DNA of 62,000 nt from Octopus vulgaris (taxonomy: Eukaryota): positions 60,222,001-60,284,000 of the forward strand of contig OX597826.1 in NCBI GenBank assembly GCA_951406725.2, written 5' to 3'. Position 1 is the stretch's first letter; each line of letters starts with the position of its first letter. The translations under genes were made by a program, and so were the position numbers. The notes beneath the pieces were generated by a model. It ran no database searches. It saw only the letters and a program-made list of their open reading frames with translations, and was not told where the DNA came from. Of this stretch, positions 5,741 to 8,116 are shown in pieces.

Positions 5741-7137
5741 ATCCCACCAGTGAGGGATCGATACTGGATGTGTCGAAACGACTGTCGTGATTAATAACAA
5801 TTCTCGCTTCTTCTATCTTTCGTCTTTCATTCACCATATACTATATATATGAGTGTGAGTGTGTGTCTGTGTGTGTGTATGTGTGTGTGCACAATATGGA
5901 GCACACATACACAAGGTATATGTTTCGTCAGATCATGGGCAGGGAGAGGCAACGAACGTAAGAAAATATATTCTCATCAATTCACTTGGTGTTATATACA
6001 TATAATCAAAGGTGTTGGAAATGCACTGGGATATGTTAAGATTTTTAATTCTAAGTTTTTAAAGATGTAAGTGGTTTCTCTGATTTTCAAAATTTTAGAC
6101 AGAAAGACGTGGAGCTGTACTGCAGACACACGCACGTTTAAACACACGCACACACATGAACACACACACACCCGCACACACACACAAACACATACTTCAT
6201 AGATTTAAAACATATCCGTTCGCGATTTTATGTTCTTTCTCTCTCGTTTTAATTTTTCTTTTTACACTTTTTGTGAAGATTAAAAGACAGAGCTACGTGA
6301 AAAGCACCACATATTTGTCTACTCCCTACTGAGGAACTTTTGTGGAATTTTTCAGAGTTTCCCTTAGAAATATCTATTTCTCTTTGCAACCAATTATATA
6401 TTGCCATGGCTCTTTTATTGCTAGCCATGCAGAGTCAATTATGATGTAAAGAAATTCCGTGTTAGATTCGAGTCTATTTATTTGATGTTTACATAAACTA
6501 TTCTACATAGTAAGATAAATAAAGAGGATATAGACTACACACATTGATTCGTTTTGTTTTGTTTCTTACTAACTATAAATTCCTACCATTTGCACTGAAG
6601 AAAGAATTGTGAACTGTGTAACCCTTACTTATTTCAAATGTGTTACTCTAACCTAAGATTGTTTCAAATTTAAGATGCATCGTTCTTTCGTCGCACCAAG
6701 AACTTAACTCTCGTTCTGAAATTCTTTCGAAAAGTTGTTTTTATACATTAAAATATATTTTCATCTTGATCGTGAACTCTACAGCATTTCTTGTATGTTC
6801 TGGTAATTTAATCTCGTTTCAAGATTCCTATACGGACTCGATGAGGACTAATCCCCTTGTTTACCTCATATCTCGGATCCCATTTCCCGCTTTGGCATTT
6901 TCGTTAACTGCTTTGTAACATAGACTTGCATCGAATGAAACCTTTGGATTTATATACTGAAGTTTAAAAACGTAAACAGTTTTGACTTACACATATGTAT
7001 AGGGATACACGTACATATAGGCGTACATACATACCTATATATATATATATATTCTTCTTTTTCCTATTGTCGTTTCTTCCTACTCTGGTTGTTATAGATC
7101 GCTAGCCACTATACATTCTTTATTTTCTCTCCTTGCT

Positions 7138-7175
7138 TCTTTCTGTGGAAGAGCGTAGGCTCGAAACATTAAAGA
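7138..7175 (+). ncRNA. Hammerhead-like motif, family 1 copy 1
   Basis: TCTTT-CTGTGGA-A-GAGC/GTAG/GCTC-GAA-ACAT-T-AAAGA. Stem I is 5 bp and stem II 4 bp; the stem III palindrome is mutated from ACGT to ACAT. Confidence 0.6.
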
Positions 7176-7633
7176 CTTTTTCATTTCCCGAGCGCTAAAC
7201 TAATACATCTGTTTGCTGTCTACACCAGCTCTCTTCGTATTTTGATATTTTAAATGAATTCTCCCCGTATATTACACGCTCACGTGTTCGCGCCAGTTGA
7301 TCCTGTCTCCTCTCATTACTCAACGAAATATTACATCTTCTACACTGGGCTATTCTACCTGGATTCCCTACCTGGACTTTCTACTCTCATACACTTCAGC
7401 TATACCTCTCCTGCCCATGGATTACACTAGACTCTCTGTTGATGAAAAATCGCTCCAATACACCACAACGTTCGAAGCTTTTGAATCTTTTGAACTTTAC
7501 TTAACTTTTTTGTACTTTCTAAACTTTTTTTGCACCTTCTGCTTTTTCCTATAGTCGTTTCGTCCTACTGTGTTTATTATAGATCGCTAGCCACTACGCG
7601 TTCTTTATTTTCTCTTCTTGTTTCTTTCTATGT

Positions 7634-7671
7634 TCCTTTGTGTGGAAGAGCGTAGGCTCGAACATTAAGGA
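7634..7671 (+). ncRNA. Hammerhead-like motif, family 1 copy 2 (degenerate)
   Basis: TCCTTT-GTGTGGA-A-GAGCGTAGGCTC-GAAC-ATT-AAGGA; C3 is changed to G and one A of GAAAC is lost. Confidence 0.45.
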
Positions 7672-7774
7672 CTTCTCTTTTCCCGAGCGTTAAACTAATA
7701 CATATGAGTGATATCTATACCACGTGTCTTCGTCCTTTGTTGTTTTTTTTTGTGAATTTTCCCTATATATATAC

Positions 7775-7825
<51 letters not shown>

Positions 7826-7862
7826 TAGACAGATAGATAGATAGACAGATATATAGATAGAT

Positions 7863-7920
<58 letters not shown>

Positions 7921-7924
7921 TATG

Positions 7925-8116
7925 TCACCATGATAGATCGTTAGCCACTACACACATTTTTTTCTCTCCTTGTTTCTTCTGTGTCCCTTTCTGTAGAAGA
8001 GCATAGGCTCGAAACGTAAAATACTTTTTCTATTCCTGAGCGTTATACTAATACATCTGTTTGCTTTATACACCGCCTGTCTTCGTTTTTTGTTGTTTTT
8101 TTTCGTAAACTCTCCC
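7925..8116 (+). mobile_element. Third copy of the family 1 terminal repeat, with hammerhead-like motif at 7988-8021
   Basis: TTT-CTGTAGA-A-GAGC/ATAG/GCTC-GAA-ACGT-A-AAA. The repeat ends in CTCTCCC followed by (TA)n. Confidence 0.65.

What the first reader, a model, noticed from the sequence alone, without database searches (positions are those of the whole stretch)
7053..8116. Retrozyme-like tandem array: three hammerhead-bearing repeats spaced ~500 and ~350 nt apart
Seen: repeat, core, repeat, microsatellite, repeat, all on plus, with predicted cuts after 7170, 7666 and 8018 (spacings 496 and 352 nt) and no protein-coding content. Known: metazoan retrozymes are non-coding tandem repeats with type I hammerheads, processed to monomers and circRNAs, and are thought to use Penelope-like RT. 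The loopless ACGU stem III needs two motifs to pair, which tandem copies on one transcript provide. Inference: a cephalopod retrozyme-like family. Copies 1 and 2 here carry mutations, so active relatives may lie elsewhere.
Basis: partly seen in the sequence, partly recalled or inferred. Interest (0 to 1): 0.85.

Follow-up and report, generated by a model that had tools for sequence, protein, structure and literature searches.

The report
Penelope-element terminal repeats with crippled hammerhead
The three repeats are real, but they are copies of the end-piece of an old Penelope-like jumping gene that has spread tens of thousands of times next to TA microsatellites, and their "hammerhead ribozyme" has a changed catalytic base in the whole family, so self-cleavage is doubtful.

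Summary
The layout is as described: repeat (7053-7266), internal piece (7267-7536), repeat (7537-7763), compound microsatellite, repeat (7924-8116), all on plus and non-coding. It is not a homogeneous tandem array. The first two repeats and the internal piece form one old composite element. The third is a younger, separate insertion into the microsatellite.

The repeat (R) is highly dispersed: 19,607 exact copies of its 25-nt motif, six copies in this window, mostly solitary. Its 3' end is fixed at ...CTCYCC and is usually followed by (TA)n.

In all three copies tested of one RT + GIY-YIG Penelope-like lineage, R lies 0.7-0.9 kb after the endonuclease and is followed by (TA)n. In one copy R also lies upstream, giving R-core-head-X-ORF-R. 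So R is that lineage's terminal repeat, and the window holds an ORF-less derivative plus a solo copy.

The motif has the hallmarks of a Penelope-type minimal hammerhead and is very unlikely to be chance. But its box reads CUGUNGA, not CUGANGA (19,607 versus 265 copies), including in the coding elements. Rfam finds no hammerhead here.

Verdict: a non-autonomous Penelope derivative. The retrozyme reading is supported for the Penelope ancestry. Self-cleavage and circles remain untested and doubtful.

The parts
7036..7052 (.). (TA)n at the 5' edge of the composite element, the presumed insertion target
   Evidence: Sequence. 26 of 48 family copies have (TA)>=4 within 45 nt upstream.
7053..7266 (+). 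R1: upstream terminal repeat (pLTR-type) of the old composite. It belongs to a subfamily with a 12-nt deletion and ACAU.
   Evidence: The closest genomic copies are 91-93% identical. It ends ...GAATTCTCCCC.
7139..7174 (+). Hammerhead-like motif 1: CUUU|CUGUGGA|A|GAGC-GUAG-GCUC|GAAA|CAU|U|AAAG. It has A6->U and has lost the ACGU palindrome.
   Evidence: read against the hammerhead numbering in PMC4209133.
7267..7536 (+). Internal 'core', which is the 5' end (untranslated leader) of the Penelope-like unit. It starts (G)TATATTACACGC.
   Evidence: 459 first-look candidates in the genome. In 19 loci it is preceded by R and followed by a 41-nt head, with or without R. In L038 it is followed by head, X and an RT ORF.
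7537..7763 (+). R2: downstream terminal repeat of the composite, including the 41-nt 'head'. It ends ...GAATTTTCCC.
   Evidence: R2 copies of different loci are 0.91-0.95 identical to one another and are closer to each other than to their own R1.
7636..7670 (+). Hammerhead-like motif 2. It is the most decayed: GUGUGGA, GAA instead of GAAA, and ACAU.
7764..7923 (.). Compound microsatellite (TA)21-(GA)n-(GATA)~36. It is the tail or target of the composite and the landing site of R3.
7924..8116 (+). R3: a younger solitary copy, starting GTCACC-ATGATAGATCG and ending CGTAAACTCTCCC.
   Evidence: 95.7% identical to the consensus of 30 genomic copies. The top 40 genomic matches are 91-95% identical.
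7987..8022 (+). Hammerhead-like motif 3: CUUU|CUGUAGA|A|GAGC-AUAG-GCUC|GAAA|CGU|A|AAAU. It has A6->U and helix I of 3 bp.
   Evidence: It fails the 4-bp helix I descriptor and passes at 3 bp.
8117..8138 (.). (TA)11 tail or target after R3
   Evidence: 34 of 48 copies have (TA)>=4 within 30 nt downstream, against a background of 6.4%.
17148..17632 (-). Another family member in the window: a 5'-truncated composite, with core 17395-17632 and then R 17148-17337
   Evidence: one search lists G000:C13:60239395-60239632.
49452..49653 (-). Another R copy. Its motif (49546-49573) is the only one in the window that fits the minimal-hammerhead descriptor with 4-bp helix I, again with U6: CUGUUGA.
48328..48442 (-). 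5'- and 3'-truncated fragment of R

Best explanation
The locus holds two insertions of a non-autonomous derivative family of an old Penelope-like retroelement (PLE) lineage.

R (about 190 nt, up to about 270 nt with its head) is the 3'-terminal region of that PLE. As is usual for PLEs, R is also found upstream of the unit as a pseudo-LTR, because insertions are partial head-to-tail tandems.

The full unit reads: core, head, X, ORF (RT, CX4CX2C linker, GIY-YIG endonuclease), about 0.7-0.9 kb of low-complexity spacer, head, R, then (TA)n.

Window 7053-7763 is an ORF-less deletion derivative in the same partial-tandem form (R, core, head, R). Window 7924-8116 is a later solitary copy of a younger subfamily that landed in the microsatellite left at the first element's 3' end.

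Inferred mechanism: transcripts ending in R are copied by target-primed reverse transcription at nicks that a PLE GIY-YIG endonuclease makes in (TA)n. This would explain the fixed 3' end, the variable 5' end and the TA repeats on both sides. The parent lineage is decayed. The young subfamilies were therefore probably moved in trans by other PLEs that are still intact in this genome and also end at (TA)n.

The hammerhead-like motif in R is the lineage's version of the minimal hammerhead that PLEs carry in their terminal repeats. It has U instead of the essential A at core position 6 in the coding elements and in about 20,000 derivatives. Efficient self-cleavage is therefore unlikely and was evidently not needed for amplification.

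Shown: repeat anatomy, family size, TA association, physical linkage of R to RT-EN ORFs, and the state of the motif.

Inferred: mobilisation in trans, and loss or weakness of cleavage.
For: Linkage of R to PLEs.
- L038 (reverse complement) reads partial R, core, head, X, then an ORF with RT motifs (LLFTLDIQSLY; FYPQISGVAM) that aligns with the RT of a bona fide RT + GIY-YIG PLE, P0001.
- Its continuation L094 aligns with P0001 residues 422-556 and 616-730. It then carries head + R (86% identical to the R consensus) and about 37 TA repeats.
- Two further independent copies of the same RT lineage show the same order: L095 (C13) and L096 (C20). R lies 0.7-0.9 kb after the EN region and is followed by (TA)n.
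- The L095 frame shows YIDD, CSRPRCRTC and YIGQTGR, with a weak Pfam GIY-YIG match at E=0.0027.
- L050 carries an 86%-identical fragment of the same RT, inverted, just upstream of its composite. Inverted 5'-truncated copies next to the upstream pLTR are a known PLE arrangement (PMC8557442).

Family anatomy.
- The 3' end is fixed and the 5' end varies: solo R with or without head, core-R, and R-core-R with different truncation points inside R1.
- (TA)n lies at the 3' side in 34 of 48 copies, against 6.4% background.

Abundance.
- Motif counts are 19,607 and 18,753.
- There are six copies in this 62-kb window.

Candidate helper elements.
- GIY-YIG gave 5,955 first-look candidates, many with 781-aa open frames.
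- One such copy (L091) has RVT_1 + GIY-YIG and a CX4CX2C linker, and ends ...TTTTTTACAAA(TA)33.

The motif.
- The consensus has 4-bp helix I, an unpaired A between positions 9 and 10.1, a G10.1-C11.1 pair, GAAA, the ACGU palindrome and a GUH site. These are the features listed for PLE minimal hammerheads in PMC4209133.
- The descriptor gave 0 hits in 150 shuffled windows.
- U6 outnumbers A6 by 19,607 to 265.
- The PLE copies themselves read CUGUUGA, UUGUGGA and CUAUGGA.
- Changes at A6 give low activity (PMC3088659, for A6C and citing the systematic core mutagenesis).
Against: - No fully intact autonomous copy with R at both ends was read. The L038/L094 copy has frameshifts, and its upstream R is 5'-truncated.
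- The nearest genomic relatives of its RT are only 55-67% identical and carry stops.
- Trans-mobilisation by the 781-aa PLE family is inferred only from co-occurrence and a shared (TA)n end. That element shows no sequence similarity to R.
- R1 and R2 of composites are not each other's closest relatives. This needs the added assumption that master copies already carried diverged repeats.
- Nobody has measured an A6U minimal hammerhead in a dimeric PLE context. PLE minimal hammerheads with canonical cores are already poor cleavers in vitro (PMC4209133), so sequence alone cannot settle activity.
- No covariation is available, because helices I and II are invariant across subfamilies.
Confidence: 0.8

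Rival explanations
1. A working retrozyme. The U6 variant hammerhead still self-cleaves, as a dimer or with host factors. Transcripts of R-core-R are cut to about 496-nt monomers, circularised, and copied by a PLE reverse transcriptase.
For: - All other hammerhead features are kept in about 19,000 copies.
- Among the three best-sampled subfamily consensuses only 3 of 36 motif positions differ. Two of them are N7 and H17, the two positions a hammerhead leaves free.
- The motif lies in a PLE terminal repeat, and two motifs lie on one strand in the composites.
- Animal retrozymes are reported to be PLE derivatives (preprint 10.64898/2026.07.22.740005; PMC7761336).
Against: - A6 is part of the U-turn of the catalytic core. 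Natural and engineered changes there give low activity (PMC3088659).
- One large subfamily has lost the ACGU palindrome (ACAU) and still amplified.
- Element ends do not coincide with the predicted cut site.
- Most copies are solitary.
- R1 and R2 were not identical at insertion.
- The motif is not more conserved between subfamilies than the rest of R: 3 of 36 positions against about 38 of 150, the latter count including gap columns.
- There is no Rfam hit.
Confidence: 0.1
2. An ordinary SINE moved by a microsatellite-specific LINE, for example the Dong/R4 type that is active in Octopus. Its hammerhead likeness and its proximity to PLE ORFs would be incidental.
For: - The elements are short, non-coding and 5'-truncated, with microsatellite tails.
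- Octopus genomes hold 11.6% SINEs, mostly unclassified, and active Dong-R4 LINEs (PMC13282606).
- The stretch GGCTCGAAAC loosely resembles a Pol III B box.
Against: - R lies at the same distance and orientation after the EN region in all three PLE copies examined, and upstream of the ORF in L038.
- No tRNA, 5S or 7SL match was found at E<=10.
- Runs of T7 and T6 between the would-be A and B boxes would stop Pol III.
- No LINE similarity was found in any fetched sequence.
Confidence: 0.05
3. A local tandem duplication or satellite with a chance hammerhead-like string.
For: Three copies lie within 1.1 kb, on one strand, among simple repeats.
Against: - The family has thousands of dispersed copies on all chromosomes.
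- Copy 3 belongs to a different, younger subfamily.
- The descriptor gave 0 hits in 150 shuffles.
Confidence: 0.02

Closest known systems
[quoted passage not shown]
   Same: The motif lies in the terminal repeat of an RT + GIY-YIG element. [quoted passage not shown] Most genomic copies are single and derive from truncated elements.
   Different: The CUGANGA box reads CUGUNGA throughout the lineage. Helix II is 4 bp, not the 6-8 bp typical of the published PLE motifs. Copy number is higher, about 2x10^4 by exact motif count.
Metazoan non-LTR retrozymes (PMC7761336; preprint 10.64898/2026.07.22.740005)
   Same: Both are non-coding and PLE-related, with repeat units of a few hundred nucleotides and hammerhead motifs on one strand. 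The proposal is the same: they are non-autonomous PLE derivatives.
   Different: Retrozymes are head-to-tail arrays with competent hammerheads and abundant circular RNAs. Here copies are mostly solitary, the array is a 1.4-unit partial tandem plus an unrelated later insertion, the core is non-canonical, and there are no RNA data.
Neptune/Nematis-type C-terminal-EN PLEs and Naiads (Craig et al. 2021, PMC8557442)
   Same: Shared features are the CX2-5CxxC linker before GIY-YIG, the insertion bias for (TA)n, partial tandems, inverted 5'-truncated copies and variable 5' ends. Like Naiads, this lineage proliferated without a canonical hammerhead.
   Different: That paper states that canonical hammerheads are universal in C-terminal-EN PLEs. 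This lineage has a one-base variant. Clade placement by phylogeny was not done.
SINEs of Octopus, 11.6% of the O. vulgaris genome and mostly 'unclassified SINE' (PMC13282606)
   Same: Size, abundance, 5' truncation and age match. The young subfamily is about 5-7% from its consensus, similar to the reported SINE burst at Jukes-Cantor distance 0.065.
   Different: There is no Pol III-type head, and the origin can be traced to a PLE terminal repeat. Whether this family is in that paper's library could not be checked.

Membership tests
Hammerhead ribozyme (type I, PLE minimal form) | Catalytic box C3-U4-G5-A6-N7-G8-A9 | tested here: not met
   The family reads CUGU-N-GA. There are 19,607 copies with T6, 265 with A6 and 592 with C/G6. 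All three window copies and all three PLE copies lack A6.
Hammerhead ribozyme (type I, PLE minimal form) | G12-A13-A14 box followed by A15.1, and a U16.1-H17 cleavage site | tested here: met
   The consensus reads GAAA-C-G-U-(A/U). In the window this is met in copies 1 and 3. Copy 2 has lost one A.
Hammerhead ribozyme (type I, PLE minimal form) | [quoted passage not shown] | tested here: met
   The sequence is A + GAGC-GUAG-GCUC. Helix II is present in the minimum-free-energy fold of R.
Hammerhead ribozyme (type I, PLE minimal form) | Palindromic 15.2/16.2, so that two motifs can form helix III | tested here: inconclusive
   ACGU occurs in about 83 of the first 100 listed copies. One subfamily, and window copies 1 and 2, have ACAU.
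Hammerhead ribozyme (type I, PLE minimal form) | Helix I of at least 4 bp flanking the core | tested here: met
   CUUU pairs with AAAG in the consensus. Window copy 3 has 3 bp.
Hammerhead ribozyme (type I, PLE minimal form) | Match to the curated Rfam hammerhead models | tested here: not met
   There is no hit at gathering score or at E<=10. The same model finds canonical hammerheads elsewhere in this genome. The model expects a helix III hairpin.
Hammerhead ribozyme (type I, PLE minimal form) | Site-specific self-cleavage | not testable with these tools
   This needs in vitro transcription or RNA end mapping.
Metazoan non-LTR retrozyme | Non-coding unit | tested here: met
   The longest frame is 98 aa and has no Pfam hit.
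Metazoan non-LTR retrozyme | Head-to-tail tandem repeats, each unit with a competent hammerhead | tested here: not met
   25 of 30 sampled loci hold one copy within +-1.5 kb. The window holds a 1.4-unit composite plus an independent insertion. The core is non-canonical.
Metazoan non-LTR retrozyme | Unit-length circular RNAs | not testable with these tools
   No transcriptome data were available.
Metazoan non-LTR retrozyme | Sequence relationship to PLE terminal repeats | tested here: met
   R is the 3'-terminal region of three RT-EN copies.
Penelope-like element, non-autonomous derivative | Autonomous relatives encode RT plus GIY-YIG endonuclease | tested here: met
   L038/L094, L095 and L096 align with P0001 (RVT_1 + GIY-YIG) over RT and EN. 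A relative from another organism, L093, aligns over residues 249-732.
Penelope-like element, non-autonomous derivative | Terminal direct repeats from partial tandem insertion, with variable 5' truncation | tested here: met
   L038 + L094 read R, core, head, X, ORF, R. A truncation series is seen.
Penelope-like element, non-autonomous derivative | Insertion bias for (TA)n microsatellites, as in Neptune- and Naiad-type elements | tested here: met
   34 of 48 copies against 6.4% background. The PLE copies end at (TA)n.
Pol III SINE (tRNA/5S/7SL-derived) | Small-RNA-derived head with A and B boxes | tested here: not met
   No Rfam small-RNA match at E<=10. T7 and T6 runs lie inside R.
LTR retrotransposon / TRIM | LTRs identical at insertion, TG...CA ends, and a primer-binding site next to the 5' LTR | tested here: not met
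   R1 and R2 are not nearest relatives. R starts TTCT... and ends ...CTCCC. No tRNA-complementary site abuts R1.

The most novel reading that the evidence does not exclude
A whole C-terminal-endonuclease Penelope lineage and its roughly 2x10^4 to 10^5 SINE-like offspring carry a minimal hammerhead whose A6 is replaced by U, while every other core and helix feature is kept. This would mean one of two things. Either the fold serves something other than fast cleavage, for example recognition by the PLE reverse transcriptase or template jumping, or U6 is tolerated in the dimeric in vivo context. It would also mean that a sizeable share of the 'unclassified SINEs' that fill octopus genomes are Penelope terminal repeats moved in trans.
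Probability: 0.2. Interest if true: 0.7.

Novelty: new member of a known kind. Interest (0 to 1): 0.45.

Why it matters
The role of hammerheads in Penelope-like elements is an open question. Naiads thrive without them, and minimal ones barely cleave in vitro.

This family offers a natural experiment. A lineage and tens of thousands of derivatives kept the whole motif except one catalytic base. One cleavage assay (U6 consensus against a U6A revertant, monomer against dimer) plus a look at octopus RNA ends would show whether cleavage matters for spread.

It also gives a concrete origin, and a likely mobilisation route, for one very abundant short interspersed repeat of a cephalopod genome. There, SINE expansions are a prominent and poorly classified feature.

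As a discovery it stays within known kinds: PLE terminal repeats, minimal hammerheads and non-autonomous PLE derivatives.

Tried and rejected
- Rfam at gathering score and at E<=10 gave only microRNA-like hits in the TA repeats, and no hammerhead, tRNA, 5S or 7SL match.
- I looked for a canonical-core subfamily. A6 copies are 1.3% of U6 copies. That is fewer than the C6+G6 copies together (592, mostly C among those listed). They are spread over all four N7 variants, so they are point mutants.
- An alternative monomeric helix III (ACGU pairing with GCGU 24 nt downstream, seen in the fold) leaves no helix I. Rejected.
- A Pol III SINE reading (B-box-like GGCTCGAAAC) was rejected. There is no A box, T-runs lie inside R, and there is no Rfam small-RNA hit.
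- LTR/TRIM and MITE readings were rejected. There are no TG...CA ends or inverted terminal repeats, and R1 differs from R2.
- The abundant intact 781-aa PLE (L091) was tested as the source of R. It shows no similarity and no hammerhead in the 4 kb read. It remains only a candidate helper.
- Canonical-hammerhead repeats of this genome (L071-L090) share nothing with R beyond the core. R copies in their flanks are incidental.
- PDB sequence searches with the RT fragment and with P0001 gave nothing useful.
- Contigs encoding RT relatives from other organisms (L092, L093) hold no R-like DNA.
- Covariation could not be assessed, because helices I and II do not vary between subfamilies.
- The Lunse et al. 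2017 paper on dimeric PLE hammerheads is not held in the library.
Three small fetches succeeded later.
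Full report
**1. What is in the window**

The plus strand of 7036-8138 reads, in order:
- (TA)n
- R1, 7053-7266
- a 270-nt internal piece, 7267-7536
- R2, 7537-7763
- a compound microsatellite, (TA)21-(GA)n-(GATA)~36, 7764-7923
- R3, 7924-8116
- (TA)11

The three R copies align with 79% mean column identity. No frame longer than 98 aa is open, and that frame has no Pfam match.

**2. The hammerhead**

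Rfam gives no hammerhead in the window at gathering score and none in 6900-8300 at E<=10. The same Rfam model does find canonical type I hammerheads in other repeats of this genome, for example GUAC-CUGAAGA-GACC...GGUC-GAAAC-AUGU-GUU-GUAC.

Read by hand, the consensus of 30 genomic copies is CCCUUU-CUGUAGA-A-GAGC-GUAG-GCUC-GAAA-CGU-A-AAAGAC. It shows:
- a 4-bp helix I
- an unpaired A between positions 9 and 10.1
- helix II closed by G10.1-C11.1
- the GAAA box
- a loopless palindromic A-C-G-U in place of helix III
- a GUH cleavage site

These are the features Cervera and de la Pena list for the minimal hammerheads of Penelope-like elements (PMC4209133).

The likeness is not chance. It found 1-2 sites in the real window.

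One essential base is wrong, however. Core position 6 is U, not A. Counts across the genome:

| Pattern | Copies |
|---|---|
| CTGTNGAAGAGCRTAGGCTCGAAAC (U6) | 19,607 |
| same with A at position 6 (canonical) | 265 |
| same with C or G at position 6 | 592 |

The A6 copies carry all four N7 variants, as the U6 copies do, so they are scattered point mutants rather than an active subfamily.

Changes at A6 are reported to give low activity (PMC3088659). In the window, copy 1 has also lost the palindrome (ACAU). Copy 2 has C3->G, a shortened GAAA and ACAU.

**3. The family**

R is one of the abundant dispersed repeats of this 2.8-Gb genome.
- Searches gave 2,008 and 3,628 first-look candidates for two R queries, with the best 40 at 91-95% identity.
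- There are six copies in this 62-kb window.
- R copies also turned up by chance in 5 of 20 unrelated 3-kb loci.
- That density suggests roughly 10^5 copies. This is a rough extrapolation.

Copies are mostly solitary: 25 of 30 loci have one copy within +-1.5 kb.

The 3' end is fixed at ...CGTAAACTCTCCC or ...GTGAATTCTCCC and is followed by (TA)n. 34 of 48 copies have (TA)>=4 within 30 nt, and 42 of 48 have some microsatellite, against 6.4% background. 26 of 48 also have (TA)n upstream.

The 5' end varies. Most copies start near GCC-ATGATAGATCG. Some carry a further 40-105-nt head.

The internal 'core' is itself repeated, with 459 candidates. In 19 loci it is preceded by R and followed by a 41-nt head, with or without another R. 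The truncation point inside the upstream R differs between loci. R-core-head-R is therefore one transposed unit with a 5'-truncation series. Another truncated example, core then R, lies at 17148-17632 on the minus strand of the window.

R3 is 95.7% identical to the young subfamily consensus, whereas R1 and R2 are about 80%. R3 is thus a separate, later insertion into the microsatellite. Within composites, R2 copies from different loci are closer to each other (0.91-0.95) than to their own R1. The two repeats were therefore not identical when inserted. That argues against both an LTR mechanism and a fresh rolling-circle copy of a single circle.

**4. The link to Penelope-like elements**

The genome is rich in PLEs. 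GIY-YIG gave 5,955 first-look candidates, many inside 781-aa open frames. One such copy (L091) encodes RVT_1 + GIY-YIG with a CX4CX2C linker and ends ...TTTTTTACAAA(TA)33. It has no similarity to R.

The decisive observation came from a core-containing locus, L038. After R(partial)-core-head comes a 330-nt pyrimidine-rich segment, X, that is shared with other composites. An ORF with PLE-type RT motifs follows on the same strand.

Fetching the next 2.8 kb (L094) showed:
- the rest of the RT, aligned with P0001 residues 422-556
- the linker and endonuclease, residues 616-730, including IGQTGRRLADRFAEH
- about 0.7 kb of spacer
- head + R, 86% identical to the consensus, with its motif reading CUAUGGA-A-GAGC...GAAACGUU-AAAG
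- about 37 TA repeats

The element spans about 3.5 kb, at G000:C16:55,203,919-55,207,461 on the minus strand.

Two further copies of the same RT lineage on other chromosomes give the same order: L095 on C13 and L096 on C20. In both, the RT-EN ORF is followed 0.7-0.9 kb later by R and then (TA)n. The L095 frame shows YIDD, CSRPRCRTC (a CX4CX2C linker) and YIGQTGR, with a weak Pfam GIY-YIG match. Their own motifs read CUGUUGA and UUGUGGA. The coding lineage itself therefore carries U6.

L050 has an 86%-identical fragment of the same RT, inverted, just upstream of its composite. This is an arrangement described for PLEs (PMC8557442).

A relative of this RT from another organism (58% identical) aligns with P0001 from RT through EN. 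This confirms that the clade is RT-HTH-GIY-YIG.

The nearest genomic copies of the L038 RT are 55-67% identical and mostly carry stops. The parent lineage is old, while the young R subfamily is only about 5-7% from its consensus.

**5. Best explanation**

R is the terminal repeat (pseudo-LTR, 3' end) of an old C-terminal-endonuclease PLE lineage with a Neptune-like linker.

'Core' is the 5' leader of the unit. The R|core junction (...CTCCCC|GTATATTACACGC) is the unit-to-unit junction of the usual PLE partial tandem.

Window 7053-7763 is an ORF-less deletion derivative in that configuration. Window 7924-8116 is a solo terminal repeat of a younger subfamily.

Copies spread by target-primed reverse transcription at (TA)n. 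The bias for (TA)n is known for Naiad PLEs and has been ascribed to the CX2-5CxxC linker in Neptune PLEs (PMC8557442). The young subfamilies were probably moved in trans by PLEs that are still intact.

The hammerhead-like motif is homologous in place and architecture to PLE minimal hammerheads, but it has a fixed A6U change. Fast self-cleavage is therefore unlikely and was not required for amplification.

I put 0.8 on the structural and ancestry part. Within it, I put about 0.7 on 'cleavage is lost or very weak'.

**6. Rivals**

- A working retrozyme with a tolerated U6 core (0.1). All other hammerhead features are conserved, and two of the three positions that differ between the three best-sampled subfamily consensuses are N7 and H17, the free positions. 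Against it: the ACAU subfamily, element ends that do not match the cut site, solitary copies, and no excess conservation of the motif.
- A LINE-driven SINE (0.05). The three-out-of-three linkage to RT-EN ORFs argues against it.
- Local duplication or chance (0.02). Excluded.

**7. Comparison with what is known, and novelty**

Dispersed minimal hammerheads from truncated PLEs (PMC4209133) and non-autonomous PLE derivatives (retrozymes; PMC7761336 and the 2026 preprint) are both known. This is a new cephalopod member of that kind.

Two points are notable:
- The one-base core variant is fixed in a whole lineage. Craig et al. state that canonical hammerheads are universal in C-terminal-EN PLEs.
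- The family shows SINE-like success in a genome where 'unclassified SINEs' make up most of an 11.6% SINE fraction (PMC13282606). No paper found links octopus SINEs to PLEs or hammerheads.

**8. Limits**

- No RNA data and no cleavage assay were available.
- No intact autonomous copy with both repeats was read.
- Clade placement was not done.
- Copy number is extrapolated.
- Whether the family is already in a curated repeat library could not be checked.

Noticed in passing
window 17148-17632 (-): A 5'-truncated composite of the same family: core 17395-17632, a short gap, then R 17148-17337. It shows the truncation series inside this very window.
   Followed up: partly
window 49452-49653 (-) and 48328-48442 (-): Two more R copies. 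The one at 49546-49573 has the best-preserved motif in the window (CUUU-CUGUUGA-A-GAGC GUAG GCUC-GAAA-CGU-U-AAAG), again with U6.
   Followed up: partly
window 8722-9153: About 430 nt of back-to-back trinucleotide repeats (CAG, AGT, GTG, GTA). They give long artefactual open frames on both strands.
   Followed up: no
window 9808-11473 (+): Several copies of a different repeat, visible as recurring translated strings (...[39 protein letters not shown]). The same sequence type (GGTTC.GGGTTCAGTCCCACTGCGTGGCAC) flanks R copies in L029 and L033. It is probably a tRNA-like SINE of this genome.
   Followed up: no
window 16207-16635 (-): A 142-aa open frame ending ...RWAGHVARLTDNRW..., which is reminiscent of the C-terminal part of LINE ORF2 proteins. 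It has no Pfam hit.
   Followed up: partly
G000 loci L071-L090: Canonical type I hammerheads occur in other repeat families of the genome. Eight score above the Rfam cut-off among 73 scored, from 263,122 first-look candidates. Some have a roughly 60-nt insertion in helix II. They are unrelated to R beyond the core.
   Followed up: partly
L091:2922-3273: The 3' untranslated region of the intact 781-aa PLE holds about 92-nt tandem repeats, each with a TGATGACGTC (CRE-like) motif. No hammerhead was found in the 4 kb read. A string CUGAAACAUGU near its 3' end looks like a deleted hammerhead.
   Followed up: no
L095 (G000:C13:83965900-83968664), reverse strand 2050-2765: The PLE copy on C13 is followed by more than 700 nt of almost pure (TA)n.
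   Followed up: no
G000:C10:4458716-4459612 (-): One of the rare canonical-A6 motif copies (CTGAGGAAGAGCATAGGCTCGAAAC) lies about 240 nt downstream of an RT fragment of the same lineage (60% identical, query residues 8-214). It may be an internally deleted element. The sequence was not fetched.
   Followed up: no
L036, L038, L039, L045, L050: A 330-nt pyrimidine-rich module, X, lies between head and ORF. In L050 it joins straight to R at about position 20. Different internal deletions of the same parent element therefore coexist.
   Followed up: partly
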